A DNA stretch of 64,000 bases, taken from contig NC_043003.1 of assembly GCF_006345805.1 (NCBI RefSeq), positions 48,360,001-48,424,000 of the forward strand, written 5' to 3'. A program made the position numbers and the translations under genes. The stretch's first letter is position 1. Each line of letters starts with the position of its first letter. This document shows positions 601 through 63,200 of the stretch, in pieces. This stretch comes from Octopus sinensis. Lineage: Eukaryota. Under the pieces are notes generated by a model. The model did no database searches and was not told the origin of the DNA. It saw only the letters and a program-made list of their open reading frames with translations.

Positions 601-1792
601 CACACATACATACACACTCAAATGTGTGTGTGTGTCCTGAAAATGGAATGAAGAAGCATGACAAAGGGGAGGAGGAGTTGATAACCAATGCCAGTGTGGG
701 AAAGTAGACATAAAATATATATATGTAATATTTATGTAAAAACTGAGGGGCTGAGTAATGATATTTTGAAAATATTTTCAGCTTTCCATTCAAACTCTGA
801 ATTAAGGACAACCTATCTCAGCAACATTTATTTAGTAATGGGCAATAACATTACTAAGTCAGCGGTTTTGAATTTCAGTTAGACCATATTCTTGGAGTAT
901 GAGAAAGACATTAAAATAAAAAGTGTCAACTGCCAAAACCTGAGACAATATTATGAAGAACACGTTTAAATGAGATAACTCATCCAAGAGTAGAAACCAT
1001 ATTAGAAATGGTTTTTTCCAAAATCTTAATTTTGGAGTATTGGCACCTTATAGGAGGTACACAAAGATACAAAACCAAATTTATATAACAACAATGTAAT
1101 ATAGCTGTAACTGATCAAAGCAGTAGTCAATTTTTTTTTTAGCAAAAATCTTACAGCATAAAGAAAGAATCCCCTAACCAGCAGTTTGTTCAATCTTTCA
1201 TTTCTGAACTTGCATTTGGTACAAAGTATGTCAAAGCTGGCTGCATCCAATGTAATTTATACTAAATATGATGCATGCTAGAATTATCACAGGTGTCCAC
1301 AGACACACCAACCTAGATATGATAGTTTTTACTTTGTCTTTGCATTAGTCACTTGCCTAACATACTGAACGCAATAGTAGACTAAGAGAAAATGCATCAG
1401 TTTAGCAATCAAGGGCCGTTAGCTTAGTTTCAATTTCTATCAAAGGAAGACAAGGAGCTGACACTAGGAGTTACACACAAGTTAAACACAAACTAAACTG
1501 GTAAAAAGGTGCAATTAATTGAAAACTAACACAGGAAACACTTTGGAACCGAGAGTAAACACTGAAAATACACAGTAGTGAATAGAGCATTTTGAAGAAT
1601 ATGGTTTTAAGTATTAAGTTGCTTGCAGGGAAGAAAGTTAGGCAAACAGTTTAGCATATAGCAAAGTAAAAGAATATATATGTAAAAGAAAAAGAAAAAA
1701 AAAAAAGAAAAAAGAGGAAAAAAACTATTGTCACATAGTTCTATGCTGGCTGCGGTGTGCTGAGGAACAGGGCCAAAATGAACGTTACTTAC

Positions 1793-2471
1793 GAGGACAA
1801 GCAACTAGCCTAGTACATAGTCCCAATACTAGGTGACGTGACTTTTGTGAAAATGAAACCAGCAGGAGAGGTTATATTGCGTGGTCAGGGATTGACCATT
1901 GGTCAGTCGAATAATATCACGTAAAAGGTGCCATGTGTTGCACCTACACATGTTGGTATGAGAGGAGAGGGCTAGGGTTGATGGCCTTCGGACTCCTCAA
2001 TCGAGGGCTGGTTCGAAAGAATTGGTCTAGGTTAATGAGTACGGTTGTTGTAGTAGTAGTGGTAGTAGTAGTAGTAGTAAACTGGTGACAGATGTAGAAT
2101 TGGATTGGTCAGATGTAGATGTGGAGTCTAGTCTTCGGAGAGCCGTTACAATTGGTCTAGGATAACATGTACAGACGACTGACAACTGTAGCATTTGGTG
2201 TCTTTGGTAGTCTCCGCAGAGAGCAGGGGTCAGTCACTCAGCAACACTGAGTTTGTAACTCGGTGGAAAGTGAGACGCAGTAGGTCGTCCAGGAATGGAG
2301 TTGTACTGTTTGGAGACAACGGAATGCCAGATCGAAGACGCAGATCATGCGGCTGACTATGATTGGTGTGTAGCAGAAGTATCTGGTGGTAGATAGTGTG
2401 CGGAGGAGACGTGTGACGCAGTAGGAGGAGCGCCGTAGCACAGTGAGGACGCACGACTGTATGACTGATCC
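1793..2471 (-). other. GC/CpG-rich 679-nt exon-like block bounded by an acceptor (2473-2472) and a GTAAGT donor (1792-1787)
   Basis: About 25 CpG by eye versus about a dozen in 2.7-7.0 kb, and the splice signals coincide with both compositional edges. Downstream lie a long pyrimidine tract and a CCTAAC...ttcttccctgcaAG acceptor (1623-1622). Confidence 0.6.
2357..2471 (-). CDS. Candidate fourth-exon reading frame (R|DQSYSRASSLCYGAPPTASHVSSAHYLPPDTSATHQS*), giving a 150-aa protein without an RS domain; may instead be a premature-stop (poison) exon
   Basis: Acceptor tttgtctAG at 2473-2472 sits exactly at the edge of a GC-rich block. Phase-2 join to exon 3; TAG at 2359-2357. Confidence 0.55.
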
Positions 2472-5400
2472 CTAGACAAACATGGGCATACAAGCATATC
2501 AAGTAAATGGCAAAGCAAAACCTAAATCCATGGATGTCATAAAGGTGGTCACTTAACCACCAGCTGACGACAGAAATACTATATTTTACACTGGCTGCAG
2601 GGATCATAGTGGAAATTAGTTTTAGCCAAAATGGAGAGCTTCTAAATAGTGTCAATAAATTATTCTACAATTGGGGGGTGGGGTGAAAAATATTTCTTTG
2701 GTTATAAACATCTTTGAAAAGTACTTCCCTGTTCAGTTACCTATAAACTTGATTAGATGGTAAGAGTAAATATTTTGATATTTGTTTTAATTAAACATTA
2801 TAATTACAGACAACTTTACTGAATATCAGCATGATGATTGCACACATCAGCTTTTGGAGAGAAAGGCTGTTTTCTTTTTTTTTTGTCTTTGCGTATGTGA
2901 TAGACTGCATCTATTGATGTATAAGTGTGGAATAAGCCAAAGAAATAATACTCAGTGTCTTAGGGTATAACCAATAATGATTTCTAATGTAAGCATATTG
3001 CTTAGGGAAAGAGAATGTGTGATGTTCATGCTTTTCTCAATTGATGAATTAATTCAAAAGCAATTATTTTAAAATCAGTATCATACTAGTGAATGTACTG
3101 GTGGAAAATTGATTCCAATACTATGGTCTTTTGCTTAGGCAGAATACAGATAGTTGCAAAGGCAAAGTTTTGTTTGTTAGAGGATTCACACCAGCCAACA
3201 ACAAACCAATGAAAAAGCATTTATTTTTGCTAAGCTGCTTAGATATAGCAGCCAAACTTCCCTTAAATCACACTTTGCTGTCTTAGAAAAATAAAAGGAC
3301 ACAGAAGATAATGTAGTCCAAGGTAGAATGGCCACAACTGGAATGCCTTTCATTACAGATCTATTTAATCAGAATGGACATGAAGCTAAACAGCACTCAA
3401 AGAATAACAGTTTAAGTGTTTTTCATGTCTAGATTCCTGCTTCTCATGTAAATGTTACTACCCTACCTAAGCTTTACAACTCTTCCTTTCCAGGTTGGCT
3501 GCAGCACATTCAACTACCACCTATATACGGCTAACAAACTTATTCAAGCTAAATTCTTATTTCAATCATAATAACAATCCAGACACTAGTTTATAACCAA
3601 AAAAAGAAAGGAATAAAAAGAAAGAAAACTTCAGTACAAAGAGTTAGAAGAGTGGGGGAGATTCCATGCAACCAGTGTAACAAAATCTAGAAATAATATA
3701 GTTGGAATTCACTGTACTTAATGCTTCACTTTGGATAAAAAAGAAACAAATTACAAACAAAAAAATTACAAGTTTTCATTTACAACCAAATAAAAAAAAA
3801 TTGTATATTTTTTGAGTATATTATTTCTCATATCAGAACAGTACCTGCAATAAAAAGTGTACAGATTACTAATCAAAGAATATAGATAAGTAATAGACTT
3901 GTGATAAAGTAATTTGAAACAACATATGGGACCAGAAGCCCTGGGGAGTCGATTTTAGAATCTAGAGTTCAAAGTTTCCCAGTGAAATTGACTTTTGTAG
4001 AACTTTGCACTAAAGGAGATTAAGAATTATATAGTCAAATGTGATGATGAACAATCCAATATCATTAGAAAGAAATTATTTTATGACAATGCCAACATGG
4101 AATTTAAAGTTCTTCCCACTGAATTTAATGAATTAAATGGTGATAAAATTAGCATTAAAATTCCTTTAAATTTTTCTGAAAACTAGGAGATATTTCAGAT
4201 ATTGTAAACCCAGTAATTTAGCTAAATTAACAACAGAATACACCCCAACTCCTCAAAAAAAATTTAAGTTAAATTATTTTCTCAATGGAATGATTGTTAT
4301 TCTCTTAGAAAATATAAGATGTAAATAATTGTGACAGAAATACTTAAAGGTGTTAATAGACTAAAATTACTATGAGTAAAATTTTGTCTAAAATATTGTC
4401 CTGAAATTGATTTCTAACACACAGTTCTCAATAATAAAGAAAAGCATTTTAGTTACTAGACAACTAGAACTCACTGGAAGTCGCTTAGGTCAGTAATTAA
4501 AAAATTTCATGGGTTTGTTAACCTATAAATCACACACATCTGTGGAAGTGAAGTCCAAAGAATAAAAGTCATCATGCTGATTTGAAAGTTGAGAAATTTG
4601 TCAAAGAAGAATACACAAACCAACAACACAACATCGACAGAAATGCAAGAGAATATTTCATACATAAATGAACTGAACTTAAAAGAAAAATACTGTAACC
4701 TTTTTAATCTAAATATATGTCAGACAAGATATTCTAAATTTTGGTAACATTTACATGCAAAAGTTTAAACTAATTATTGTTCAGTTAAAATAAAACTATA
4801 TCCACAGCAGACATAACTGTAGTCTGCATTCTATCAGAGCATCCATTAGTGTGTTGACATGTCTGCAGGCCTAGGAAAACATGAATATTTCCAACATAAA
4901 GAACTCTGGCCAAAAACAGAATCTTATATTCCCAGGTTTCCCCGCTCTCTCTCTCTCTCACTGGCACATGTCAATCCAAACACACACACACATCTGTTTT
5001 TGGTTATGGGGAAGTAAAATGCTATTTTTCCATGGTCTAGAAATGCATACCGAGGAAAGATCCTTTTTTAAAGTAGTTTTTCCTCATTAGTGGGGGGAGG
5101 GAGTTGTGAAGATTAAAAAAAGTCGACAAATTGCCATGTTTAATAAAATAAACAGAATTCCCAACTTTTTAAACTTGTTTAAACCTCTTTGAAGAAAGAA
5201 GAATGGTATCAATGTAAATTCTAGTTTGTCTTCTCATTAATGATGAAGGAGACAAGGGCAAAAAAACTTTCGTTAATAGTTTGGTGGTATTTGTCATTTT
5301 GAAAATCAAGCCTTAAAATAATATCTAACTGAAGACTAGGTTTAGGATATTCAAGAAAAATTGATACACAAGAACCAAATCCCCCCCAAATCCTCACTTT

Positions 5401-7813: not shown

Positions 7814-8110
7814 ATTCATCATCATTTAACATCCATTGTCCATGCTGGCATAGGTTGGATGGTTTGACCAGGGCTGGCAAGCTGGAAGGCTGCACCAGGT
7901 TCCAGTCTGTTTTGACATGGTTTCTACAGCTAGATACACTTCCTAATGCCAACCACTCAGAGCGTAACGGATTTTTTTTACGTGCCACCGGTGTCTGCCA
8001 TGACTGCAGATTTGGCTTGATGGGTCTTCTCAAGCACAGCATAATGCCAAATGGGACTCAGTCATTGCCTCCTCAAGGCCCAACACTCCAAGCCCGGCAT
8101 AGTGCCACAT
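7814..8110 (-). mobile_element. RTE-LINE-type 3'-tail repeat with (GAT)n tail
   Basis: catcatcatttaacatcc...ccatgctggcat...ggctgcaccagg...ttcctaatgccaaccactc is shared with copies at 17694, 35005, 50686, 57845, 58895 and 62865. Confidence 0.7.
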
Positions 8111-9195: not shown

Positions 9196-9309
9196 CGACG
9201 CCAATGGCCTCCAGAATGACCCATGCCTCTCCGTCTAGAATTTCCTCTTGGTTTCCTTGTTTGGTATGGACGAGCATGTTCTACACGAACTCTTCGACCA
9301 CTAACAGAT
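9196..9309 (-). CDS. Third coding exon (114 nt; R|SVSGRRVRVEHARPYQTRKPRGNSRRRGMGHSGGHWR|R): end of RRM plus Arg/Gly-rich linker
   Basis: Acceptor tctctctcttttttttgaAG, donor TCG|GTATGT, phase 2-2. GRRVRVE matches the RRM beta4 strand of SRSF3/7 (GCRVRVE). Confidence 0.93.
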
Positions 9310-10537: not shown

Positions 10538-10710
10538 CATGATGATAAAATAATGGGCTTCTTTCAGTTTCTATCAACCAAATCCATTCACAAGATTTTG
10601 TTGGCCAGCAGCTATAGTCAAAAACTCCTGCCCAAGGAATCCACGCAGTGGAACTGAACCTGAAACCATGCTGTTGAGAAACAAACTTAACCCACAGCCA
10701 CATGCATGTA
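10538..10710 (-). mobile_element. Partial tRNA-derived SINE
   Basis: Similar to the full copies at 22752 and 36422 (cttctttcagttt...ccaaatcc...gcagtggaactgaacc). Confidence 0.6.
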
Positions 10711-11633: not shown

Positions 11634-11711
11634 CTGCCATCAAGGTCTCTGACAGCGCGTTCAGCATCTTCTGGGTATTTGAAAACCAAAAATGCAAATC
11701 CTGGTGGGTTT
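11634..11711 (-). CDS. Second coding exon (78 nt; R|NPPGFAFLVFKYPEDAERAVRDLDG|R, RNP1 motif)
   Basis: Acceptor tgtatttAG, donor CAG|GTAAGG, phase 2-2. It continues the frame of exon 1 to give the diagnostic RNPPGFAF of the SRSF3/7 family. Confidence 0.95.
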
Positions 11712-12629
11712 CTAAATACAATAAAAAATTTATAGTAAAAAATAGAATGAAAAATTAAAACTGATGTGTAATAAAAGCAAAACAACAAAAAAAAATAACC
11801 ATCAAAAGAAGAATGTTGTAATATTAAACACTAGCAATATCAAAGAATCCTGAATCAAATGTGGAGATGCTGCCAGTGTGAGTGTGTGTGTAGGTTTTAT
11901 TTAGGCCAGGAAGAAGCAATGTCCATGATCTTTGAAATGTCCCTCCCAAACTGAGGGATGTCTGTAGAGAAATCATGGGCATGGAGGAAGGAAGGGAGAT
12001 CAAGATGGCTTTACGCCAGGAAAGAGAAGATGGAACAAAGTGTTTAGCATGGGATTTAGGAATAACACACAACAGAGGAGAAAAAGAGAAGCAAATGAGT
12101 TGGATGGGTCTAGTCTTGCCAATTCCAAAGAGCAGACATAGTTTTAGCAGAAGGGATAGAATGAACTAACAGGGCAATAGTGTGTTTTTTAGTGAATGAA
12201 CCTTGATGGTTTTCTTTTAGATGTGGTCCTAAATATGTGTGTGCGGCAGCAGCTTGATGATTCCAGGTGTAATCTCAATGCTAATGTTAATATTACCTCT
12301 TCAAAAGTACAGCAAATAGCAGCACTTCCAAGATAGTTAAACAATAGATAGCAATATAAGAAATGGAATGAGACAATGTTTAGAAAAGACATTAGGTCTT
12401 TTACCACTTTCAAATTATTCTTGCCACAGACAAATTTTTGAGTAAAGAGAACAGCTCTGGAGTTAAAAGGACAGCAACATTTCATATCAATTAATTACAC
12501 TTCTGTTATTGTTTAGTCTTCATTAAATGTGGTGATAATGGCAGATGACACGATTGCAGACAAGCTAACATTTGATGATGACCCACAGAATTAATCAGGT
12601 CCAACATGTCAGGCTCAGTTGAAACTTAC

Positions 12630-12787
12630 CGGTCAGTTAGCTTTCTAGTTACGAATTGTATTTCTGATGTTGGTGCTTAGTATTGTTGCTATTGCTGGTA
12701 TTAGTAATGTTGCTGTGGTGGTGGTAATGGTGGTAGTAGTAGTAGAGGTGGTGGTAATAGTGGTGGTGGTAGTAGTAGTTGGTATTG
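12630..12787 (-). other. Candidate 158-nt poison cassette exon in intron 1
   Basis: TACTAAG branch-like motif (12817-12811), cttgtttcttcattCAG acceptor (12790-12788) and CCG|GTAAGT donor (12630/12629). In-frame TAA at 12651-12649 when spliced after exon 1; length is not a multiple of 3. Confidence 0.65.
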
Positions 12788-16440: not shown

Positions 16441-17671
16441 CACGGGTTGGACAAAATAATGGAAACACCTAGCATCATAATTTTGAAATATCTATAACAC
16501 TGTCAAAAGCTTGCTCTTTTTATGTTTTTTTAAATTTATTATTAGTGTTGCTTAATATGGTTTGCTAAAATTGCTGTTTCCTTTCAGATATCATCAGAAA
16601 AAGGTAATTAAAATTCATTAAAGAGGTCAAATTGTTGGTGCTCGTATAGCAGGTGCTAGCGTAACGAAAACAGCTGAAATGTTTGGTGTATCAAGAAGTA
16701 CTGTCTCAAAAGTAATGACAGCCTTTGAGAAAGAGGGAAACAAAACAAAACTCCAGAAGAAAACTAAAACTTTCAGATAGGGATCGTTGATCTCTTATGC
16801 AAATTGTTAGAAAGGATCACAAAATTGCAGCTCCCAAAATTACAGCAGAGCTTAATGACCACCTTGAGAACCCAGTTTCTACTAAAAACTGTTCGCCGGG
16901 AGCTACACAAAGCCGGATTTCACAGGAGGGCTGCAATTAGAAAAGCACTACTTTCAAAAACAAATGTTGCAAAGCATTTAGAGTGGAATAAAAACCTACA
17001 GAATTGGTCCCTAGAGCAGTGGAAGAATGTTATTTTCTCGGATAAGTCATCCTTTATCTTATTTCTGGCTCCCGTCCAAGTATACTTGTGGAGACAGCCA
17101 AAAGAAGCATTTAACCCAGACTGCCTTCTTCCAACTGTTAAACATGGAGGTGGGTCTGTGATGATTGGGGGGGGGGGCTATATCTTGGAAATCTGCTGGC
17201 CCAATGGTTTCCCTTCATGACAGAATTAATAGACAAGACTATTTAAGCATTTTATTTGATTAGATTCATTCCATGGTTGTGGAATTGTTTCCGGAGGGAT
17301 GTGCAATCTTTCAGGATGATAATGCACCAATTCATACAGCTAAAATTGTTACTGAATGACACGAGGAACATTCTAGTGAAGTTGAACATCTTATCTGGCC
17401 ACCACAGTCCCCAGATCTCAATATTATTGAACATTTATGGTGCATTTTAGAAAAACAAGGAGTTGATATTCTCCACCATCATCACTACAAGAACTGGAGA
17501 CTGTTTTAGCTGAAGAATGGACAAAAATTCCTTTGTAAACAATTCAAACTTTGTACGAGTCCATACCTCGTAGAATTCAAGCTGTAATTACTGCCAAAGG
17601 CAATCCTACCCCATATTAAAATAAATTTGCTTGAAATTTTAAGGCGTTTCCATTATTTTGTCCAACCCTTG
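16441..17671 (+). mobile_element. Near full-length decayed Tc1-family DNA transposon (DD34E)
   Basis: TIRs ca(c/a)gggttggacaaaataatggaaac(a/g)cc at both ends, TA after the right end. Frameshifted transposase with GQIVGAR...GVSRSTVS, WKNVIFSDKS, TVKHGGGSVMI, FQDDNAPIH and WPPQSPDLNIIEH. Confidence 0.93.
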
Positions 17672-17693
17672 TATATGTATATATGGGTATCAT

Positions 17694-17875
17694 CATCATT
17701 TAACATCCACTTTCCATGCTGGCATGAGCTGGACGGTTTGACTGAGGACTGGCAAGCCAGAAGGCTGCACCAGGTCCAATCTCATCTGACAAGATTTCTA
17801 CAGCTGGATGCCCTTCCTAACGGCAACCACTCAGAGTATAGTCAGTGCTTTTTATATGCCACCGGCACCGGGGCC
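17694..17875 (-). mobile_element. RTE-type 3'-tail repeat
   Basis: Same family as 7814-8110. Confidence 0.7.
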
Positions 17876-31546: not shown

Positions 31547-34500
31547 TATATAGAGATTGCTGGGTGACAGAATGTGATTGGCAATAGTAAATGGACAAAA
31601 GTGTGGGTGAGAGGGGTGGCAAAACAAAAGTGGTTCAGAAAAGATAGAGGGTACTGGTTGGCAACCAGGACTGTAAAGTTAGAATGAGGGGGAGGTTATT
31701 GCAGTCTCCTGTCCCTGTATAAAAGCTTGAAGAGCAAGAGGGCAGAGTGATGAGGATGGTGCAAGCAGCACAGATGGTGGGAAGAGACGGAGAGTTAAGA
31801 GTGATAACTACATGGACAACAAATGCAAGAAGGGCTGGAAGATGTGGGTCTAGCAAGATACAAATATATGTGTAGACTTTTACTAAAATTCGGTGTCAAC
31901 CTCTACATTTCAATAATAGTATAAGCTTTTAAATTGTACAAATTTCATCCATCACATCTTGTAAGATACAACCTCTTAATGTAATACTATGATTTGAAAT
32001 GTATGATTGATAGTGTAATGATGTTACACACACAAGCATATACATATTTTAGTACTGTATTAAGTTCATTTAGCAAACTAATACTTTCAACAAATGCATA
32101 GAAAAAATAGAGCAAGAAAAGGAGGAAATGAGAGAGTGAGATAGCTAAAAACACAGTGGCATCACAAACTTTACTATGTATTCATATTCTTTTGTCTCCC
32201 CCACCATATCACTTTCACTGTCAACTTTCTTCCAGGTATTTTTCTTATATGTTTAACTCTACAAAGCCTCTCACTTCTTAGAATCTTGTCTTACCTTTTC
32301 TCTCTACCTCACTTTCTCATTATGATTCCAAAATTTATCTCCCTCCCTCTGAAGATTTACTAATAACTCTTTTCTATATTCTCCCATTTTTCTCTAGTTT
32401 TCTCTCCATCTCTTTATTGATTCTACAATTTCTACCTCTACTTCTCTCACTCACACCATCTGTTTTCTCTAACTTTCTATTTACTACTATGTATCTTTCT
32501 TCATTTACCATTATCAACATCACTGCCACCATCTCCACACCACTTCCATAACTAGTTCCATAACTAGTTTCTTTCTTACTCTATTTAAGTCTTCCCTTAA
32601 CATGACACAAAAGGTTGGTCAGTAGGAAGGAAGGAACAGTATTAATATGCAGATATCAGTTAATTTATAGGACTGTATGAGTAAATTAATATTATCAAAA
32701 CAGTAGAACATCAAACTAATACTTTGCAATATTTAGCTAGCTCTCTCACATCTGTTTTTAGCCCAAACCCTACCAAGTTTAACCAATTCCCTCACATACC
32801 TGATAAGGATTGGGAACAGTACTAAGTAACAATAATACAGCAAAGTTTATTCATTTATATAACTCTCTCGCACAAAATCTGCCATGTGCCTAACACATAA
32901 TTCAATTTACGTAAATTCCAGCCATGTGTGTTTGTGCTTGTATATGCAGACTATAAAAACACACACACATACATGCACAACATTATCTTAACTTTCCCCC
33001 AGGGTCAGTTCAAAACCTGAAATATTTTCCCACAAAAATAGCATGCTAACAACACACAGACAGAGAGAACATTTGGTTTTTATTTAAAAGGAAAACAAAC
33101 AAACATAACTATAGTAATCAAGATATCAAGTTGAATGACAGCAGCTAATAGAGAGAAGAAAAAGAAAAATTATTTGACTTTATTTTTTTTTTCTCCACAA
33201 CAGCTCACAGTTTAGGAGAATGAATAGAGTGAATGTATGTAAGTGAGAGGGGAGAAAATAAGACATCATCACTGAAGTAAAAGCAGAAACAGGAAATCTT
33301 GGAGTGAGGAATGCAAAATAAATATAAACTAAACAGATAAAATCTAACAGAAGTTACATAAAGAAGCCCTAAAGAATGTCATTTTCTCTACATTTTATTC
33401 ACTAATCAATTTTGCTGGCCAAACTTTTAGGCATGGCTGGTGCATTAAGGGAGCAAGCTAGGCTAGCAGCAAATTCCCAAAATGGTGGGAGCATACAGCA
33501 GGCACATGCAGTGAGAAACCATTATGTCTGATGTGGAAGGGGATGGGGGGAATTAAGCAAATTAGGACAGAGAAGGAAAAAGTGAGAGGTAGCATAGATG
33601 TTAAGTTTACAGACAGGGTTTAAACAGGTATTGTGTATATGAGGTGCGATTGGTGTAGTGAGAGAGAGAGAGAGAGCAGATAAAGTATGAGAAAAGGGTA
33701 CAGGAGAGAGAAAGGTATGAGAAAGTAGACAGAGAAAGGTACAGAAGAGAGAGAGAGAAAATAGAGGAAGGTGCAAAGATAGATATGATACAATTTGATT
33801 ATTTTCATAGCTTGTGAATGCAGTAAAATTGCAAAACAAAAAACGTTTGCATATATTAGTTTAATATTTACCATGCCTCTCCAGTGATCTCAGTAATTAA
33901 ATGGGTAAAGTAATTCTCAAATACAAAATATTAATTATACCAAAATACTGAATAATTCTAAAGATGAGAAGAACATTAAAAACATTAGGGCTTGACGATG
34001 TAATATCAAATATCTAAGTATGATGGATTAATCAAATTACAAACTCTTTTCAGGACATAAAGTTTACTTGAAATGTTTGATTACTCTCACCTGTTTTCAT
34101 ATGCTGTTCACTGATAAGCCTTCAAGCAAAATGAAAAGATAGTTGTTTTTAAACACCTATTCCCACGAGATTTACTTACAGTTCAACAAATCTACAGGAT
34201 CCATTAAATTGCAAATAGATCACAAGTCCTATCTGCAATAAAGTGAGTTGTACACAAGTAAATCCAAAAACTTAGTTTTCGGAATAATTATAATGTACAA
34301 ACTTTTCTTTTTCAAGCAGAAGCAATTGCGATCTATTTCACAATTCCATGCCAAGAATATTAGTAAATAACATTAGCGCATTCTACATCCTCCATTAGAG
34401 TGTGAAATCTTCCAAAATATAACTGATTTGTCCTGTAGTTCAACAAAACATCAGTAGCTAGCAAAACTTATTCTGCATTGATTAACAAGAGCAGAGATGG

Positions 34501-35004: not shown

Positions 35005-35230
35005 CCAGCTGTAAAAACCATGCCAAAGCAGACCTTGCTGGTGCCATATAAGAAGTACTCGGTCTATTCTGTAAAGTGGATGGCATTAGGAAAGGCATCC
35101 AGGTGTAAAAACCATGCCAAAACAGACAGTGGAGCTAGGTGTAGTCCTCTGGCATGCAAGATCCTGTCAAACCGTCCAAACCAGCATAGAAGACAGACGT
35201 TAAATGATGACTGAACAATTACCTTGGAAA
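35005..35230 (+). mobile_element. RTE-type 3'-tail repeat
   Basis: ggcattaggaaaggcatccag...ccagcatagaagacagacgttaaatgatga. Confidence 0.65.
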
Positions 35231-41110: not shown

Positions 41111-41497
41111 AAGACTAATATGGTAGTAAGATGCAGTAGATATAGCTAACATTTTAACTAGTCTTATAATCAACCAGAGCTGAGACTGCTCCATATCTAT
41201 GACATAAAACTTAAATGTGAAGTATTATGTTAAAAAATTAAAACCGCCAGCACAAACACTGTTTTGCTATGTTCCACACACCAGCTTGATAACAGGAAGA
41301 ATCAGTTATTTTATTAAACTACTTCAAGGTCTTATTTTCTTCGTATCCCATAAGAAATATCGTAACAAAGGGATTTTAAGCACAAAGGTAACAAGTTAGC
41401 CCAGAGTAGCCTTCCACTGTGACCCTCCTATTTCTGTAAATATTCTATAAGAATTGTTTGATAAGCGTGAAAAGCAACACAAAAACAATGGTTAAAG

Positions 41498-42061
41498 GGT
41501 TAATATCTAGATCCGCACCCGGTGGAAAAAATACATATATATACATACATATATATACATACACATATATATACATACACACACATATATATACATACAC
41601 ACATATATACATACACACATATATACATACACACACATATATATACATACACACATATATACATACACACATATATACACACACACACATATATATACAT
41701 ACACACACATATATATACATACACACACATATATATATACACACACATATATATATACACACACACACATATATATATACACACATATATATACACACAC
41801 ATATATATACACACACACATATATATACACACATATATATATACACACACATATATATACACACACACACATATATATACACACATATATATATGCACAC
41901 ACATATATATACACACACACACATATATATACACACATATATATATACACACACACATATATATACACACACACATATATATACACACACACACATATAT
42001 ATATACTGTTACACATTTGCGTTTCCATTTTTTCCACCGGGTGCGGATCTAGATATTAACC
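41498..42061. mobile_element. Young MITE with perfect 33-bp TIRs and 8-bp TSD, interior almost entirely (TA)/(CA)/(TACA) microsatellite
   Basis: TIR ggttaatatctagatccgcacccggtggaaaaa (41498-41530) has its exact reverse complement at 42029-42061. GGTTAAAG is duplicated at 41490-41497 and 42062-42069. Confidence 0.92.
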
Positions 42062-43858
42062 GGTTAAAGGTTAGATAAAATAGAAACGTTAACGTTTCGG
42101 ACATAAGCGCTCCACAAAGACTTTTGAAAATAAAATGGAAAAAAAAAACTTTGCCCATCTTCGTCTTGGTAAGAGATGAGATTTAAACAAAGAAAATAAA
42201 TAGCTTGGCAACAAGGAAACTTCTATTTAGCCATTTGACTTGCCCAGTGTCACAGTCAAATCTCTTTCAACGGTCCTACCATCTAATGGGAACCAGATGA
42301 TTAAATTCCTAAATCTAAACAGATCGTACAATTAAATCAACAATAGTTCAAAAACTAGGTAAGAAACAGACACAAAGGTTGGCAGCGTGATGACCAAAAT
42401 ATTATTTCCGATTGCCAAGATGACCATATACTTTATCTTGGAATACGTGAGACTACAATTATATATATAGTTAGGGTCATTCACAGATATACACGTTACC
42501 TATATTCGCGCATTTACACAATTCAGGTCTAGTCAGACACTTCCGCATACTCACAAAGTGCGCACATACACTTAAGGAAATGCGCACGCACACACAAGTG
42601 TCGCCCGCACACTCTGATATGTAGTCAGGCAAACACAATCAATAACATACGTAACCACACGTACACGCATTCAGGCAAGCGCGCATACAAACAGCACATA
42701 CAAAATCATGGCTACAGAAAGAGACAGAGGTAACACTATTAAATGAAAACTCCTAGCTGAACCTCGTTCTCTAGGTCATGTCTAGACGTCTTGCATTTTA
42801 ACCGACAAACGTTTGTACATGAACAGTATAGGAGTGTACCTGAGCCGTAAAGAAGACCACGTACAATTGTATATCTCTAGAAATAGAAACTACAAAATGG
42901 ATACTTAAATAGTGAATCGTCAGAGAAAGACACCGATCCATCATATTTATACGAGCGATAAAAAGGATAACTAACGGTCGATAGATGATGTAGACAGAAG
43001 TAAAAAAAAAATAATAATAAAACAAGTGCCAGTAGAAAGGAACGAGATATAGAATAGATACATACAATGATGCTATCAGTACTACCCGTCCTATTAAAAC
43101 TATTCCAAATACACACCCACACACATATCAATAAGGGCAGCATGCTAAACCGAAGGGTATGTATGGTGTAGTTGATAGACAAAAATAGATTACCATCAAC
43201 ATTATTTCCACAAAACTGGGTGTCTCCTACACCGCTACTTTTACTTCTAATGTTATTTATTCTCACTGAGTCGCGACTAGAGTTTTTGCTATTGTATCTA
43301 GAACTCTATTAGCTAATGAAAACCCGTGTTTTTTTTAAAGTCAACAGAGGGGAATTTAGGTTGCTATTTTTGGAAGGTCAAGCTTCTTTGGTGGGGGGGG
43401 GAGTTAACAAAAGGTGCGTAATCTTTAGCACTTGACAAAAATTTACCAAAACATTTTCCATAAGAAATCGAAATTAAAAAAAAAACCGCTAGATTTTTTT
43501 TTTCCAAATAAAAAGTGCAGGGGATAATGTTAACAAGACCATTTAAATCATATTTTAGAAAAACACAGTGTGTGTGTGTGTACGCATATATAACATTAAG
43601 CATATCGGGTTTATTATATAAACTCGAAATGAAAAAAAAAAAAAAACAGAAATAAGGTTTTGTGGAACACTAATTCTTTTCATGCGTACTGAAATGGTGT
43701 CTCCACTTCCGACGCGTTTGAAGAGAAAAAAAAAATGACGATTGCAGCCATGAAATGGGTGGTTTACCTTTTTTTCAAGCTTCCGTCTCGTAACATCAGT
43801 TACGAAACAGACTGGCAAAAGAGATCGCCGTAATAGACATTAACAAAGCATATATGCA

Positions 43859-43893
<35 letters not shown>

Positions 43894-44256
43894 TCCTACA
43901 TACACATATATATTAAATATTTTTTAAGTGCCAGTTTAAATTAAAAAGGGACTAAAAAAACCACCCACTCACTCACTCCTCTTTTAATGAAATCTTAGCC
44001 GTCAATTTCATATAGTACATGCACACAAACACCACCAATCTCAAGATAAAATGTTGAAAATTGACATTTTTCCGTCTGTCTCGCAGTCTCCAGGAACACG
44101 ATAAGTAAATAAATCTGAATATGGAGCATTCTCTCTCTCTCTTACCATTTTTTTGTGTTTTTTTTTAAATCACACACACACGCAAAAAAAAACATTTTTC
44201 TCATTAGCTTTACAATATTACAACATACACACACATATATATATACGCGCTCGCGC

Positions 44257-44294
<38 letters not shown>

Positions 44295-44956
44295 CAGGAG
44301 AGGCGAGTAGTTTAGGTTTCTATTGGAAACCTTTCGTCATATAAAAAAAAAAAATGTAAATTATTCCCTTGTTTGACTTTCTCACGACTTCTTAGTTTCT
44401 CCACCATGAAATTCTCTATATTTTATTTTTAAACATCAGCGGAGATAAAATATTTACACATAAATACGCACGCATTTTATATGTGCGTATTTTTTTTACC
44501 TGCTCCGAGATGCTAGAAATTTCAGAGAAACTCTCTTTCAGCATGTAATGAAATCGCGCAGCAATAAACATGTAATGACATCGAGGAATGGAAAAATAGA
44601 GATTAATGTAAAGAGAAGAAATAGAGACATAGATATATACAAAGAGGTAGAGGGCAAAAATTGTATAAGTATGAGACAGATATATATAAGATAGTTCGGG
44701 GAAGAGAATCGGCTCTGTGTAAAACAAGGGAATTAAAAAGAAACCCAAAAATAGAGTTAACGATATTTAGTATTAATAATAATAATGAGAGGATCAGCCA
44801 CAAAAGTAAAATATAGAAAAATTAGGGAAACGAGTCAAGGAAAAGAATTAAAAGATAGCAATAGGAGAATTGGAGGAAGACTTTAAGAAGAGATAGAGAT
44901 GGGGGGAAAGAATCTTGGTTGGGGTCGAAAAAAATGTTTTTTATTATAAACCTTAC

Positions 44957-45102
44957 CTGGCAACCCATATATCGGTTATGGGTCCAAACGACTTGAATTG
45001 CCTCTCTAATTCATTCTTGCCAATTCGACTGCCTAGATCACCTACAAAAATTCTGTAACCACCTCTAATGCGGTCAAGAACTGCACGATTTACCATCGTC
45101 AT
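44957..45102 (-). CDS. First coding exon of an SRSF3/SRSF7/RBP1-like RRM splicing-factor gene (MTMVNRAVLDRIRGGYRIFVGDLGSRIGKNELERQFKSFGPITDIWVA, RNP2 region)
   Basis: Hand translation matches the SRSF3/7 RRM N-half (cf. KVYVGNLG...[21 protein letters not shown]). ATG at 45102 (second ATG at 45096) with an in-frame TAA six codons upstream. Donor CAG|GTAAGG at 44957/44956, phase 2. A possible acceptor (tttcttcag, AG at 45130-45129) just upstream could indicate a further 5'UTR exon. Confidence 0.92.
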
Positions 45103-45392
45103 GAAGTTAGAGCGATATTACAGAGTAGCTGAAGAAATGGTGGTGGACAAGCCAAGGGAAGATAACTAATGGTAGGCTTAACAATGAAACTCTCCAGTTT
45201 AACGGGGGCTAATTACATTGTGATTCTTTTTATTTTAATTAACATTCTTTTCTTTTTATTAACTCCTAACAATCAAGTGCTATTTAATATCTAATCTCAC
45301 CTTAAGTCTTAGTCTTTGATATACTTTCTCCCAAAATAGAAAAGGAAAATTATTAGACCATATCTTAAATTTGTTATTTTATTTACTCAAAT

Positions 45393-47293
45393 TAATGTGT
45401 GCGTACGTTAAATGAAGAGCAAACATTTACTGCTGAAAGAATTCTGTACTATAGCAATGATAAAATCATTTCTGTTACACTGAGCAACCGAAATTTTGTT
45501 CGCTTATATGTGAAACATGTTTAGATTATTTTAGGACACTGTTTCCCAAAAATTACATTTTTTTTTCCTATCACGTTAACTTTTTTTATTCTGTAATATA
45601 TTCCCATTTTTAATAATAGCCTACCTACCTGACTTCAATGACACTAGCTAGCTCACATTTCAGTGTCTTGGAAGTTATACCTGTTCTTTAGTATATTAAG
45701 GCGTTCTGGTTCCAAACACGTCACTATTTCGGCTACATCTTTTCTAGTTTGAGAATTAACTGCAGACTCCTATATGCTGATGTATTCATTCATGCACTGA
45801 AATTAGGAACCCCAGCTGCACCTTGCATTTTGATCCCTTAGAAATTAGACATTCTTGAGATGTAGTTGAGACACATCAGTTTTGTTTTATTATCTCTAAT
45901 AAATATCAGTTATTTTGATACTAAAATAATAATATCATTGCTATTGCTATATGACATACTATTAAGATAACTACATAAACATCGTTTTATGTCTGCTTTC
46001 TATGTTGGCATGGGTTGGCTGATCACAATTATTAAATTAGTTTATTCCCTCACGAAAGCTTACAGTCAAGCTATTGAACTAAGAAGTGTCAGCTTTGACA
46101 ACGTTTACTGTAAGGCAAAGATCTTTTATGTCCACCACAACCATCCCTGGAAAAGCAAAAGGGCTCATAAAAAAATTCTAATTTCAGATTCAATAGGCAT
46201 CAATGAGTCATATGCACGGTCTTGGTTTGTTCTATTTATTTTAAAACTTTTTTGGCAACCGTTAAGCAGATTCTAAATTTGGAGAAGACATGCTTTCTAA
46301 TTTTAATAAGCTTAGCTGTAACAAGATTCAAAGCCCATTATCTCTACTGTCACTTAGAACACTTTCCAGTAAAACTTGATAATGTATGGGAAGATAAAGG
46401 TTTCATCAGAATATTAACACAATGAAGAGAAGGTGGAATGCACTCATAATGTTAAATTACAACTGGAATCTTCAATAAGACTGTCATGCATATATCTCAG
46501 TCTAGAAAGTCCTATACAAAAAAATGTCTTATGAATTGAGTGACTGATCATTTTATATGTTTCATGCTTATTTTTAAGCTACAGTTACTAATGCAGTACT
46601 GCATCTCCAAAGCTGAAGACGATCATGCAAAACTGGTGATAAATTTGGAATCAGTGTCTCATGTACCCAAGAATAAGGTGCAAGTTACAAACCAGCAGAA
46701 TGTTTTTGATAATAATAAAGTGGTTAACTGTTGACTTTAAGTTTCACCTCTCAATGTTCATTCAAACATGCATATACATGAAACTCAAGAAATAAAACAA
46801 TATTAAATGTGTGTGTGTGAGGGAGAGAGTATAGGTGAAATAAACATTAGAGATGTTTTGCCTTGTACTTAGAGATATTGCAAGTTCTTCTAAAAGTAAC
46901 AAAAACCACCACAATGGCAAAAACCTTTCCATATCATCAGGAGGTACCTCAGAGTCACAAGTGTTTCATGCCTTTTCTGTGTGGCCACATTGTTATGCTT
47001 CACTCAAGTGAAGCATACAGGCTAAGCATGAGTGAAGCATAACAATGTGGTCACACAGACATGGAAAATATCCAACAATACAACAGCCGTATTGCTAGGA
47101 ATATTAACAGCAATGTCATGAGACTTCTTAATGTGTGTGTACGTTAAATGATGAATAGCAAACATTTACTGCTGAAAGAACTCCATACTATAACAATAAA
47201 AATATCATTTCTATTACACTGAGCAACTGAAACTTTGTTTGCTTATATGTTTCCCAAAAATTACATTTTTTTTTCCTATCACATTAATTTTTT
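45393..47293 (+). repeat. Dispersed direct repeat, copies at 45393-45586 and 47129-47293
   Basis: tacgttaaatga...gcaaacatttactgctgaaaga...ttacactgagcaac...gtttcccaaaaattacattttttttcctatcac is shared; the second copy has an internal deletion. Confidence 0.88.
46977..47058. repeat. 30-bp inverted repeat (46977-47006 and 47029-47058) with 22-nt loop
   Basis: ctgtgtggccacattgttatgcttcactca versus tgagtgaagcataacaatgtggtcacacag; one mismatch, which is G:U on the + strand. Confidence 0.9.
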
Positions 47294-50685: not shown

Positions 50686-50884
50686 GCCATGACTGGCTCC
50701 TGTGCTGGTACCATGTTAAAAGCACCCACTACACTCTCAGAATGGTTGGCATTAGGAAGGGCATCCAGCTGTAGAAACCTTGCCAGATCAGACTGGAGCC
50801 TTGTGCAGCCTCCTGGCTTGCCAGTCCCCAGTCAAACCATCCAACCTATGCCAGCATGGACAGCGGATGTTAAATGATGATGAT

Positions 50885-55934: not shown

Positions 55935-56575
55935 GTGTCCCCAAAACATGTACTGAGAGTGATAAAAATCAAACATCCAGTTAACATCATGACATTTTGG
56001 AGTGATCACTAGTGATGATGACATTATGCCTCCATTCATCTTCCTCACCACCTCAGACTCAACACGGAGGCCTACATCAACTACTTGGAGGAGATAGTGA
56101 TGCTCTGGGTCAAGAGGGTGACTGCTGGAAGACCTATGTCTGGCAACAGCATTCTGCACTATGCCACACAAACAGGAGAACCCAGTCATGGCTGTCAAAC
56201 AATTTCTGCAACCACATCACCCCTAACATCAGGCCACCTAACTCCCCAGACTGCAATCCCCTTGATTATTATGTATGGGGTGCAGTTGCGCAAGAGACCA
56301 ACAAAACTCCTTGCAACACCAAAAATGAAATGAAGGTAAGGATTATAGCAGCATTCACCAAATTAAACAAAGAGACCATTCAAAAGAGTTGCAGGAGATT
56401 CCAAAGTTATCAGGAGGCCGTGGTTGAAGCCAATAGTGATTTTATTGAATAAATATACTCTTTAGTATTTTTAAGATATTTTAATGTAATTTTGGTAAAT
56501 ATATATATATTAAAATGAGATGTCAGTGTTATTTTCATTTTTGTGTAATTTAGAGGACAGTTTATTCACCACACC

Positions 56576-57844: not shown

Positions 57845-58268
57845 GATGACTGGCATCCGTGCTAGTGGAGCGCTAAGAGCACCATCTGAGCATGATCGTT
57901 GCCAGAGCAGCTAACTGGCTTCCGTGCGGTGACACGTAAAAAGCACCATTGATCGTTATCACATGAAAAAAAAACATTTGAGCAAGGTCGTTTCCAGTGC
58001 TGCTGGACTGGCTCCTGTGCAGATGGCAAGTAAAAAACACCATTTGAGTGTGGCCATTGCCAGTACCGCCTGACTGGCTCTCGTGCCGGCGACACGTAAA
58101 AGCACCCACTACACTCTCGGAGTGGTTGGCATTTGGAAGGACATCCAGCTGTAGAAACCCTGCCAGATCAGATTGGAGCTTGGTGCAGCCATCTGGTTCG
58201 CCAGTCCTCAGTCAAATCGTCCAACTCATGCTAGCATGGAAAGTGGATGTTAAACAATGATGATGATG
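57845..58268 (+). mobile_element. RTE-type 3'-tail repeat, long CpG-retaining copy
   Basis: Repeated cacgtaaaa(a)gcacc units, ggagtggttggc...aaggacatccagctgtagaaacc, and a (GAT)n tail. Confidence 0.8.
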
Positions 58269-58727
58269 AGGTCAAGCAAGACCTAAGTTGGGTGTCTTTT
58301 CAGTGGGTTAGACAGATAAAACACTTGGTATCAGCATGAACTTGTTTAGTCTCTTTTGAGGATAGGATGTAAAGTTTAGGCCTGTAGTAAGAGGGCTTCC
58401 GAGAGAGGAAGATCTCTCATGATAATGATCGGTGCAGATAATTTGGGGATCATTGTTATCTGAAGAGTAGGCAGAATTAATGATTTTTAGGCTGATCATT
58501 TGTGCTTAAATTTTATTGTATAGAAGCCTAATAGTGTTTAATATAAAATGATACACTCTTATTGATAGAGTCTCATGAGTGTGTGCAAATGTGAGTCTGT
58601 GGTAAATAAAGCTTTCATTCAAGCAGCCCCGTTTGACTAACTGCAATTATTATTACAGTTTTAAAAAAACAATAAACAAACAAAACAAAAAGCAACAACA
58701 ACAATGGTATTTCAACTGATATAAGGC

Positions 58728-59200
58728 ACAGGTATGGCTGAGTGGTTAAGAAGTTTGCTTCCAAACCACATGGTTTTGGGTTCAGTTCCTTTACATGGTA
58801 GCTTGGACAAGTGTCTTCTATTATAGAGCTGGGCTGACTAAAGCCTTGTGAGTGGATCTGGTTGACAGAAATGAAAAAGTCTATCATGTATATACCATCA
58901 TCATTGTTTAACATCTGCCTTCCATGCTGGCTATTGGTTAGATGATTTGAGAGGAGCCATCAAGTAGAAGACTACACCAAGCTTTTGTCTGTTTTGGCAT
59001 GGTTTTTATGGCTGGATGTCCTTCCTAACACCAAGCATCCCTGCAGAGCGGACTGAGAGTTTTTTTACGTGGCATTAGCATAGGCAAGGTCAGTTTTGGC
59101 ATGGCTTTTACAGCTGGATGCCTTTTTCCAAATGCCTACCACTTCACAGTGTGGACTGGATGCTTTTTATGTGGCACCAGCACAGGCAGGGTCACCAAGT
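58728..59200. mobile_element. tRNA-SINE (+, 58728-58880) joined tail-to-tail with an RTE-tail repeat (-, 58895-59200)
   Basis: Similarity to other in-window copies. Confidence 0.65.
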
Positions 59201-62864: not shown

Positions 62865-63200
62865 CATCATCGTTTTAATGTCCGTTCTCCATGCTAGCAT
62901 GGGTTGGACGGTTCGACCGGGGATCTGGGAAGCCAGAAGGCTGCACCAGGCTCCAGTCTTATCTGGCAATGTTTCTACAGCTGGATACCTTTCCTAACGC
63001 CAACCACTCCATGAGTGTAGTGGGTGCTTTTTACGTGCCACCTGCACAGGTGCCAGGCGAGGCTGTCAACGGCCATGGTCAGATTGGTGTATTTTATGTG
63101 CCACCGGCACGGAAGCCAGTCGAGGCTGTGCTGGCATCGGCCACGAGTCGGATAGTGCTTTTTACGTACCACCAGACCAGGGATCCTGGCTGGTTCAATT
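62865..63200 (-). mobile_element. RTE-type 3'-tail repeat
   Basis: Reverse complement of the 57845-58268 family. Confidence 0.8.

What the first reader, a model, noticed from the sequence alone, without database searches (positions are those of the whole stretch)
1793..2471. Large CpG-retaining exon in the position of the SRSF3 poison exon
Seen: a sharply bounded GC-rich block with an acceptor at one edge and a GTAAGT donor at the other. Spliced to exon 3 it stops after 37 codons, 564 nt upstream of that donor. Known: vertebrate SRSF3 has an NMD-triggering exon (exon 4) after the exon that ends the RRM and Arg-rich linker and before the RS exons, and SRSF7 has a poison cassette at a comparable place. 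Inference: this is the cephalopod equivalent and the RS-domain exon(s) lie left of the window. Alternatively it is the true last coding exon with a 3'UTR intron (1792-1622), which could also make the mRNA NMD-sensitive. CpG survival in a methylated gene body suggests sequence constraint.
Basis: partly seen in the sequence, partly recalled or inferred. Interest (0 to 1): 0.75.

Follow-up and report, generated by a model that had tools for sequence, protein, structure and literature searches.

The report
Candidate poison exon in SR gene
A 679-base non-coding block inside a splicing-factor gene looks like a self-limiting "poison" exon of the kind known from vertebrate SRSF3 and SRSF7. Relatives in a clam, an acorn worm and other animals carry similar blocks in the same intron, but whether RNA actually uses this one could not be tested.

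Summary
On the minus strand, a unique 679-nt block (2471-1793) starts at tttgtctag|G and ends at CTC|GTAAGT. Spliced to exon 3 (ends 9196, phase 2), it gives TAG after 37 codons, 564 nt before the donor. The block has GC 0.48 and CpG o/e 0.74, against 0.07-0.25 in its flanks. It is the only region in 64 kb that is GC-rich, CpG-retaining and C>G on the sense strand.

Corrections:
- The host gene is not the SRSF3 orthologue. It belongs to a separate "VEHARP" clade of the SRSF3/7 family.
- The cephalopod origin is unverified.
- The 3' compositional edge lies about 50-70 nt past the donor.
- The exon side of the donor is poor.

New support:
- The homologous phase-2 intron in Mactra, Glandiceps, Capitella and a metagenome contig each holds a 203-427-nt AG...GT-bounded, C>G, stop-filled block.
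- One transcript contig carries a 419-nt stop-containing insert at that junction.
- These blocks share no sequence.
- No RS exon lies in the window.

Verdict: probably an alternatively included, PTC-introducing exon (about 0.7). Its use and its NMD sensitivity are untested. It is a new member of a known kind.

The parts
44957..45102 (-). Exon 1 of the SR-type gene. It starts at the ATG (45102) and ends ...GCCAG|gtaagg in phase 2. It encodes MTMVNRAVLDRIRGGYRIFVGDLGSRIGKNELERQFKSFGPITDIWVA(R).
   Evidence: tblastn with SRSF3/7, sequence, translation. The same exon boundary occurs in Mactra.
11634..11711 (-). Exon 2: (R)NPPGFAFLVFKYPEDAERAVRDLDG(R). This is the RNP-1 part of the RRM. Its donor is CAG|gtaagg.
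9196..9309 (-). Exon 3: end of the RRM plus the Arg-rich linker (...VRVEHARPYQTRKPRGNSRRRGMGHSGGHWR). It ends in phase 2 at GTCG|gtatgt, a weak donor.
   Evidence: Placement of the AAG acceptor follows the alignment to orthologues.
2472..2521 (-). 3' splice region of the block. There is a candidate branch point TTGAT about 28 nt upstream. The tract cttgtatgcccatgtttgtc is followed by TAG, with 14 of 20 pyrimidines, the best of the local AG sites.
1793..2471 (-). Candidate poison exon. It is 679 nt long (679 mod 3 = 1), has stops in all three sense frames and is unique in the window. GC is 0.48, CpG o/e 0.74, and sense-strand C/G is 1.96.
2357..2359 (-). In-frame TAG, 37 codons into the block and 564 nt upstream of the donor.
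1787..1792 (-). GTAAGT 5' splice site. The exon side is CTC, which is non-consensus.
1681..1786 (-). Downstream intronic flank. About 60 nt stay GC-rich with 2 CpG (down to about 1726). A run of about 45 nt of T follows (1725-1681).
1898..2157 (-). Cluster of four GACCAAT motifs on the sense strand. The block as a whole has six CCAAT, all in the same orientation. Short internal repeats include CCTAGACCAATT x2, TCTACATCTG x2 and CCTACTGCGTC x2.
2043..2079 (-). (UAC)n-CAACAACC tract, an array of overlapping WCWWC words.
2594..2596 (-). Alternative upstream acceptor ccctgcag|C. An exon starting at 2594 would also stop early.

Best explanation
The block 2471-1793 is most likely an alternatively used, non-coding cassette exon (a poison exon) of an SRSF3/7-family splicing-factor gene. 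The gene's RS-domain exons would lie beyond the left edge of the window.

Proposed mechanism:
- When the block is skipped, exon 3 joins the first RS exon in frame and the full SR protein is made.
- When the 2471 acceptor and the 1793 donor are used, a TAG is read 37 codons in. At least one exon junction would then lie 564 nt downstream of the stop.
- That mRNA would either be degraded by nonsense-mediated decay or give an RRM-only protein of 150 residues.
- Inclusion is probably promoted by the gene's own product or by related SR proteins binding the C-rich, G-poor exon. That would close a negative feedback loop, as in vertebrate SRSF3 exon 4.

Shown: the anatomy, the reading frame, the exon-like composition and CpG retention, the absence of RS exons in the window, and the recurrence of the same architecture in orthologues.

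Inferred: that the splice sites are used, that inclusion is alternative, that NMD follows, and that the regulator is the protein itself.
For: 1. Anatomy and frame.

2. Exon-like signature:
- Block: GC 0.48, CpG o/e 0.74, TpG/CpA o/e 1.18/1.35.
- Coding exons 1-3: GC 0.46, CpG o/e 0.82.
- Introns: CpG o/e 0.13-0.19.
- The gene's unmethylated-type 5' domain (42000-45500): GC 0.34, CpG o/e 0.98, TpG/CpA 0.91/1.09.

3. Uniqueness. The combined criterion (GC>=0.42, sense C/G>=1.3, CpG o/e>=0.6) picks only 2625-1726 on the sense strand of the whole window.

4. Non-coding. There are stops in all frames. The six-frame translation finds nothing among 5.8 billion proteins. No homologue covers the 37-codon tail.

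5. RS domain. All full-length relatives have an RS domain after the linker. The window has none.

6. Same phase-2 intron and same kind of block in other loci:
- Mactra L004, 33022-33389: 368 nt, unique, GC 0.42 against 0.29, C/G 1.64 against 0.96, CpG o/e 0.77 against 0.25, stop after 26 codons. The annotated CDS skips it.
- Glandiceps L013, 11850-12276: 427 nt, a strong pyrimidine tract, TAG|gtaaat, stop after 34 codons. It is the only sense-strand hit of the scan in 16.5 kb.
- L006, 1996-2414: 419 nt. T content drops from 25 to 10 per 60 nt at the acceptor and returns to 25 just past the donor. Stop after 43 codons.
- Capitella L012, 4243-4445: 203 nt, a weaker case.

7. Direct RNA evidence in a relative. 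Logan transcript L001 has introns 1 and 2 and the RS-region introns removed. It still carries a 419-nt stop-containing insert exactly at this junction.

8. Literature:
- SRSF3 promotes inclusion of its own 456-nt PTC exon 4 (PMC11193772).
[quoted passage not shown] This fits C/G ratios of 1.4-2.0 in all six blocks.
Against: - There is no transcript, junction or expression evidence for this genome. No protein from this gene is in the 5.8-billion-protein collection.
- No close relative could be aligned, so constraint rests only on CpG retention.
- The six blocks share no sequence beyond chance. Their homology therefore rests on position, phase and composition.
- I found the orthologue candidates with a compositional scan plus inspection, so some selection bias is possible.
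- The donor's exon side is poor, and equally good donors occur about every 600 nt.
- The 3' compositional edge overshoots the donor.
- SRSF3-type words (WCWWC, CAUC) are not enriched once the (UAC)n tract is removed.
- The L001 insert begins with GT and ends with AG, so it may be a retained intron rather than a cassette.
- EJC-type NMD has not been shown for this lineage.
Confidence: 0.7

Rival explanations
1. The block is the constitutive last coding exon. The protein would be a 150-residue RRM-only factor without an RS domain. The rest of the block and the sequence downstream would be 3'UTR, with or without a small 3'UTR intron (1792 to about 1622 or 1562), ending near the only AATAAA at 832.
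For: - The ORF closes in the block.
- No RS exon lies in the window.
- A single AATAAA/ATTAAA occurs on the minus strand between 2600 and 1, at 832.
- AAG acceptors are used in this gene: the exon 3 acceptor is one, placed by homology. The 1622 AAG site is therefore not absurd.
Against: - Every full-length relative has an RS domain after this junction.
- The annotated Mactra CDS skips its equivalent block and continues into RS exons 8.6 kb further on.
- The 37-codon tail matches no protein.
- CpG retention runs through the whole 679 nt, not only the 114 coding nt. It stops about 70 nt after the donor, and everything further down looks like intron, with CpG o/e 0.19.
Confidence: 0.1
2. The block is an intragenic CpG-island-like promoter or enhancer bound by NF-Y at CCAAT boxes. 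It might drive a transcript whose short first exon ends at the 1793 donor. It would not be an exon of the SR gene.
For: - Six CCAAT on one strand against 0.63 expected, with 0 of 1000 shuffles reaching that count.
- Four GACCAAT within 260 nt.
- Two or three of them fit the NF-Y flanks (CCAATCA, CCAATGG).
- The last one lies about 105 nt upstream of the donor.
- A CACGTCA element lies at about 1838.
- CpG richness continues past the donor, as it does downstream of start sites.
Against: - The TpG/CpA excess (1.18/1.35) and CpG o/e of 0.74 differ from this gene's own unmethylated-type 5' domain. That domain spans 3.5 kb, has CpG o/e 0.98, TpG/CpA 0.91/1.09, and no rise in GC.
- The block is narrow, and its 5' edge sits exactly on a good acceptor.
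- The sense strand is C-rich, not G-rich.
- The equivalent blocks in Mactra, L006 and Glandiceps have no CCAAT cluster yet share everything else.
Confidence: 0.1
3. The block is a unique, relatively young insertion or other compositional oddity (a non-autonomous element or a captured fragment). It would keep its CpGs because it is young. The flanking AG and GTAAGT would be chance, and the block would never be spliced.
For: - Splice-like motifs of this quality are common.
- An 8-nt direct repeat, GCAGCCAG, flanks the GC-rich span at 2598-2591 and 1753-1746. About 13 such pairs are expected by chance in that stretch.
- Most other GC-rich islands in the window are SINE copies.
Against: - The block is single-copy in the window, whereas the SINEs have 8-10 copies.
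- It has no coding capacity or protein match in any frame, no Rfam match and no poly-A tail in the right orientation.
- Four other genomes have a like block in the same intron.
Confidence: 0.07

Closest known systems
Vertebrate SRSF3 (SRp20) exon 4, the autoregulated poison exon
   Same: - A large non-coding cassette: 456 nt in human (PMC11193772: 951 against 495 bp) against 679 nt here.
- It lies between the exon that ends the RRM and linker and the RS exons.
- It has an early in-frame stop, which predicts NMD or a truncated RRM-only protein.
- The host is a single-RRM SR protein with the NPPGFAF motif.
   Different: - The host gene here is not the SRSF3 orthologue (42-44% identity).
- No sequence conservation was detectable between phyla, whereas the vertebrate exon is ultraconserved.
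- Inclusion, autoregulation and NMD are untested here.
- I did not check whether the intron phase matches human SRSF3.
Vertebrate SRSF7 (9G8) poison cassette exon
   Same: - The place in the gene is comparable.
- The nearest deuterostome relative of the window's protein (Glandiceps, P0006) has the SRSF7-type CCHC zinc knuckle, and it carries the same kind of block.
   Different: - The window's protein has no zinc knuckle in exon 3.
- The purine-rich GAYGAY words attributed to SRSF7 binding (from my memory) are not enriched: 1 against 0.5 expected.
Drosophila Rbp1 / Rbp1-like / XL6 feedback by unproductive splicing (Kumar and Lopez 2005, cited in PMC4274639)
   Same: - These are invertebrate SRSF3/7-family genes that hold their own level down by alternative splicing.
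- Their proteins bind CU-rich, G-poor RNA (PMC4274639).
   Different: I could not read the original paper, so I did not compare the fly event with this one. The window's protein is closer to the bivalve and hemichordate clade than to Rbp1-like proteins.

Membership tests
SRSF3/SRSF7 (Rbp1, XL6, 9G8) family of SR protein genes | A single N-terminal RRM with the WVARNPPGFAF RNP-1 motif | tested here: met
   tblastn. 786 homologues, all RRM_1, named SRSF7-like, SRSF3-like or RNA-binding protein 1. The columns W46 A48 R49 N50 P51 P52 G53 F54 A55 are invariant.
SRSF3/SRSF7 (Rbp1, XL6, 9G8) family of SR protein genes | A C-terminal Arg/Ser-rich domain | tested here: inconclusive
   No RS-rich open frame lies anywhere in the 64 kb. 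In Mactra the first RS exon is 19.2 kb after exon 3. The window offers only 9.2 kb after exon 3.
SRSF3 orthologue specifically | Closest to SRSF3/Rbp1 among family members | tested here: not met
   42-44% identity to human SRSF3 and SRSF7 and to oyster and starfish Rbp1-like proteins, against 62-67% to the clade with GGYRVF...VEHARP (Mactra, Mya, L001, Glandiceps).
Poison (PTC-introducing) cassette exon of an SR gene | An internal exon with its own 3' and 5' splice sites, lying between the RRM/linker exon and the RS exons | tested here: met
   The acceptor tag|G has the best local pyrimidine tract, and the donor is GTAAGT. The intron is homologous and phase 2 in five other loci. Only the sequence motifs are shown, not their use.
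Poison (PTC-introducing) cassette exon of an SR gene | An in-frame stop more than about 50 nt upstream of a downstream exon junction, and a length that is not a multiple of 3 | tested here: met
   TAG 564 nt before the donor; 679 mod 3 = 1. This holds only if a downstream exon exists.
Poison (PTC-introducing) cassette exon of an SR gene | Alternative inclusion, with a productive skipping isoform | not testable with these tools
   No RNA data exist for this genome. The only indirect support is the L001 transcript with an insert and the Mactra CDS that skips its block.
Poison (PTC-introducing) cassette exon of an SR gene | The inclusion isoform is degraded by NMD and responds to the level of the SR protein | not testable with these tools
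   Needs UPF1 depletion or cycloheximide, plus overexpression or knock-down.
Poison (PTC-introducing) cassette exon of an SR gene | Unusually strong sequence conservation | tested here: inconclusive
   Between phyla there is none. Within the lineage it could not be tested. The only proxy is CpG retention at the coding-exon level in a CpG-depleted gene body, seen here and in Mactra.
CpG-island-type promoter with NF-Y sites | An unmethylated signature (CpG o/e near 1, no TpG/CpA excess) over a kilobase-scale domain | tested here: not met
   The block has CpG o/e 0.74 and TpG/CpA 1.18/1.35 over about 740 nt. The gene's own 5' domain has 0.98 and 0.91/1.09 over 3.5 kb.
CpG-island-type promoter with NF-Y sites | Clustered CCAAT boxes | tested here: met
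   Six CCAAT and four GACCAAT, all on one strand. This cluster remains unexplained.
Interspersed repeat (SINE or DNA element) | Multiple copies, terminal repeats or a tail | tested here: not met
   There is no second copy in the window, whereas the SINEs have 8-10 copies. Genome-wide copy number could not be tested.

The most novel reading that the evidence does not exclude
The poison exon of SRSF3/7-type genes may be ancestral to bilaterians rather than a vertebrate feature. The same phase-2 intron holds a 200-680-nt, C-over-G, stop-filled exon in a mollusc-like genome (this window), a bivalve, an annelid, a hemichordate and an unidentified eukaryote. Its sequence would have turned over completely between phyla while staying under coding-level constraint within lineages. 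On this reading, the sense-strand GACCAAU x4 cluster would be a lineage-specific binding platform for the feedback regulator.
Probability: 0.3. Interest if true: 0.6.

Novelty: new member of a known kind. Interest (0 to 1): 0.42.

Why it matters
Poison exons of SR genes are best known as vertebrate ultraconserved elements, and I found no paper describing one in a mollusc or hemichordate. If this block and its counterparts in a bivalve, an annelid and a hemichordate are used as such, feedback at this intron of the SRSF3/7 family would predate vertebrates. It would also persist by position, phase and composition while the sequence itself is replaced. That bears on why the vertebrate versions are frozen.

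The work also gives a simple way to find such exons in unannotated, CpG-depleted invertebrate genomes. Look for a unique intronic block with exon-level GC and CpG and a C-over-G bias on the sense strand.

Tried and rejected
- **Protein coding in the block.** Six-frame translation of 1700-2560 against 5.8 billion proteins found nothing.
- **Structured RNA.** Rfam on the whole window found nothing.
- **Repeat element.** The block has no second copy in the window.
- **Nucleotide homology.** The block shows nothing significant against the L001 insert, the Mactra locus or L006. The only match is a low-complexity (YAC)n tract, and the window has a second such tract in intron 1.
- **SRSF3-type binding words (WCWWC, CAUC, CUCKUCY).** WCWWC looked enriched (21 against 14.4), but this vanished once the microsatellite was removed.
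- **Shared k-mers across the six blocks.** At chance level: 12 seven-mers occur in at least 3 of 6, against 13.3 expected. The window-Glandiceps pair (15 shared 8-mers against 6.7; 8 of 300 shuffles reach that) does not survive 15 comparisons.
- **Source organism.**
  - The search with exons 1-3 plus the tail gave no near-identical protein.
  - A search with two Tc1-like ORFs gave only unnamed ENA and Logan hits.
  - A metagenome scan with a 20-mer of the block found nothing.
- **Oyster and starfish Rbp1-like truncated isoforms (P0058, P0073, P0096) and Mya P0005.** Their loci are not on record.
- **Mactra CpG island at L004 28600-29500** (CRE and CCAAT motifs, CpG o/e 1.2-1.6). Considered as the counterpart and set aside in favour of 33022-33389.
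- **L005 and P0014 contigs.** These are genomic, with an intronless RRM, and are not informative.

Full report
**1. What is there**

The gene lies on the minus strand. Reading the DNA gave three exons with clean splice sites and matching phases:
- exon 1, 45102-44957;
- exon 2, 11711-11634;
- exon 3, 9309-9196.

Together they encode a 112-residue RRM plus an Arg-rich linker. Exon 3 ends after two bases of a codon.

The flagged block runs from 2471 (after ...catgtttgtctag) to 1793 (before GTAAGT). Joined to exon 3, it reads R, then 37 codons, then TAG at 2359-2357. The stop ends 564 nt before the end of the block.

**2. Is it more than chance?**

The splice motifs alone are not.
- By a rough donor matrix, 111 minus-strand GT sites in the window score at least as well as CTC|GTAAGT.
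- Several AGs lie nearby, including a good alternative acceptor at 2595/2594.

The composition is what stands out.
- The block has GC 0.48 and 26 CpG (o/e 0.74). The intron before it has o/e 0.13 and the 1.7 kb after it 0.19.
- Outside the gene's 5' domain, no other 679-nt stretch exceeds 19 CpG.
- At the acceptor, 50-nt bins jump from GC 0.38 with 0 CpG to GC 0.58 with 4 CpG.
- The 3' edge is softer. GC-rich sequence with two more CpGs runs about 50-70 nt past the donor and is followed by a 45-nt T run.
- The block is single-copy in the window, unlike the other GC-rich islands, which are SINE copies.
- A combined criterion (GC>=0.42, sense-strand C/G>=1.3, CpG o/e>=0.6) picks exactly one region on the sense strand of the whole 64 kb: 2625-1726.

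**3. Exon or unmethylated island?**

A 1-kb CpG map shows one unmethylated-type domain, 42000-45500, around exon 1. There CpG o/e is 0.98, TpG/CpA o/e is 0.91/1.09, and GC is only 0.34. Everything else is depleted.

The block differs from that domain.
- It is narrow and GC-rich.
- It carries the TpG/CpA excess of methylated DNA (1.18/1.35).
- It resembles the coding exons (GC 0.46, CpG o/e 0.82).

The argument rests on small counts.

**4. It is not coding**

- All three sense frames have stops.
- The six-frame translation finds no relative among 5.8 billion proteins.
- No homologue of the gene covers the 37-codon tail.
- Rfam finds nothing.

**5. The host gene**

The protein has the WVARNPPGFAF motif of the SRSF3/7 family. 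However, it is only 42-44% identical to human SRSF3 and SRSF7 and to oyster and starfish Rbp1-like proteins. It is 62-67% identical to a clade with GGYRVF...VEHARP. That clade contains:
- bivalves (Mactra, Mya);
- a hemichordate protein with a CCHC knuckle (Glandiceps);
- Logan transcript L001.

Calling the gene "SRSF3" is therefore too specific.

All full-length members of the clade have an RS domain after the linker. The window has no RS-rich frame on either strand. If RS exons exist, they lie left of base 1.

No near-identical protein is in the collection, and the source organism could not be established.

**6. Evidence from relatives**

This is the main new result. In every locus I could fetch, the exon that ends the linker stops in phase 2, as it does here. 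The following intron holds a comparable block.

| Locus | Block | Length | In-frame stop | Other features |
|---|---|---|---|---|
| Mactra antiquata (L004) | 33022-33389 | 368 nt | after 26 codons | 19.2-kb intron; bounded by ctattcag\|G and AACCAG\|gtattc; GC 0.42 vs 0.29; C/G 1.64 vs 0.96; CpG o/e 0.77 vs 0.25; unique in locus; skipped by the annotated CDS |
| Glandiceps talaboti (L013) | 11850-12276 | 427 nt | after 34 codons | about 4.1-kb intron; long pyrimidine tract; followed by gtaaat; the only sense-strand hit of the scan in 16.5 kb |
| Metagenome contig L006 | 1996-2414 | 419 nt | after 43 codons | introns of 285, 135 and 1192 nt; T content falls at the acceptor and returns just past the donor |
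| Capitella (L012) | 4243-4445 | 203 nt | after 19 codons | a weaker candidate |

Transcript contig L001 has its other introns removed. It still carries a 419-nt insert with a stop after 29 codons, exactly between the linker and the RS region. The insert has exon-like GC and CpG. It begins with GT and ends with AG, so a retained intron cannot be excluded.

All six blocks have sense-strand C/G of 1.4-2.0, and none has a length divisible by 3.

The blocks share no sequence beyond chance. The case for a common origin therefore rests on position, phase and composition. I found the candidates by scan plus inspection, which carries some risk of bias.

**7. Mechanism**

By analogy with vertebrate SRSF3, inclusion of the block would give an mRNA with a stop far upstream of an exon junction, or a truncated RRM-only protein. 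Skipping would give the SR protein. SRSF3 promotes inclusion of its own 456-nt exon 4 (PMC11193772).

The C-rich, G-poor sense strand fits the CU-rich, G-poor motifs reported for XL6, Rbp1 and SRSF3 (PMC4274639). Specific SRSF3 words are not enriched once the (UAC)n tract is set aside.

Lareau and Brenner (PMC4379411) showed that unproductive splicing in SR genes is both ancient and often re-invented. Either history is open here.

**8. Rivals**

- **Terminal coding exon with a 3'UTR (0.1).** Not excluded. One AATAAA lies at 832.
- **Intragenic promoter or enhancer (0.1).** It draws on a real and unexplained feature. There are six sense-strand CCAAT and four GACCAAT within 260 nt, against 0.63 and 0.04 expected. 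The methylation-type signature argues against it. So does the absence of such a cluster in the counterpart blocks.
- **Young insertion with chance splice motifs (0.07).** It fits poorly with single-copy status and with the recurrence in other genomes.

**9. Verdict**

The block is most likely a poison-type alternative exon of an SRSF3/7-family gene (0.7). That makes it a new member of a known kind.

The wider reading is that this exon class is ancestral in bilaterian SRSF3/7-type genes, with full sequence turnover. It is possible (about 0.3) and would be of moderate to good interest.

Noticed in passing
window 42000-45500: A 3.5-kb domain around exon 1 and the start of intron 1 has CpG o/e 0.98 and no TpG/CpA excess, with GC only 0.34. 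It is probably the gene's unmethylated 5' domain. The rest of the 64 kb, including the 18 kb upstream, is CpG-depleted (o/e 0.03-0.5).
   Followed up: partly
window 1898-2157 (minus strand): Four GACCAAT and, in the whole block, six CCAAT, all in the sense orientation. Short internal duplicates include CCTAGACCAATT x2 (130 nt apart), TCTACATCTG x2 and CCTACTGCGTC x2. This cluster is not found in the counterpart blocks of other species. Its role as a DNA-level (NF-Y) or RNA-level element is unexplained.
   Followed up: partly
window 12690-12785 (minus strand, intron 1): A second tract of about 100-130 nt of (UAC/CAC/AAC)n in the sense orientation, like the one in the block (2043-2079). It lies about 1 kb upstream of exon 2.
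   Followed up: no
L001 320-738 and L006 1996-2414: The stop-containing insert of transcript L001 and the candidate exon of contig L006 are both exactly 419 nt long, yet they share no sequence (129 identical positions against 137 +/- 27 for shuffles). Probably a coincidence.
   Followed up: partly
window 7816-7991; other copies near 17690-17865, 35075-35215, 50733-50883, 58086-58270, 58898-59074 and 62863-63042: A SINE-like repeat family of about 180 nt, 73-87% identical between copies. A second family has copies near 10553-10702, 22991, 36651, 40922 and 55305.
   Followed up: partly
window 16804-17220 (+) and 56012-56452 (+): Decayed Tc1/mariner transposase fragments. The best protein matches (60-72% identity) are unnamed ENA and Logan contigs.
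   Followed up: partly
window 41445-42078: About 600 nt of a compound (TA/TG/CA) microsatellite. It gives spurious ORFs of 164-206 codons on both strands.
   Followed up: no
L004 28600-29500 (Mactra intron 3): A 900-nt CpG-rich island (o/e 1.2-1.6) with several TGACGTCA motifs and CCAAT/ATTGG motifs, preceded by a G run. It is a promoter-like or mobile-element sequence inside the same intron as the candidate exon.
   Followed up: no
L007 1203-1280 (JGI metagenome contig Ga0256913_10119469): A genomic contig with an exon 2 orthologue, 82% identical at the protein level. It has CA/GT microsatellites like the window. This is the nearest relative found, but it is only 1.5 kb long.
   Followed up: no
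P0058, P0073 (oysters) and P0096 (Acanthaster): NCBI 'isoform X2' products of the canonical Rbp1-like genes end in short non-RS tails, or run into a long non-RS tail, right after the linker. A poison-exon isoform would give this pattern. P0096 contains TTNNTNQQQHHH, which implies an A/C-rich tract. Their loci could not be fetched.
   Followed up: partly
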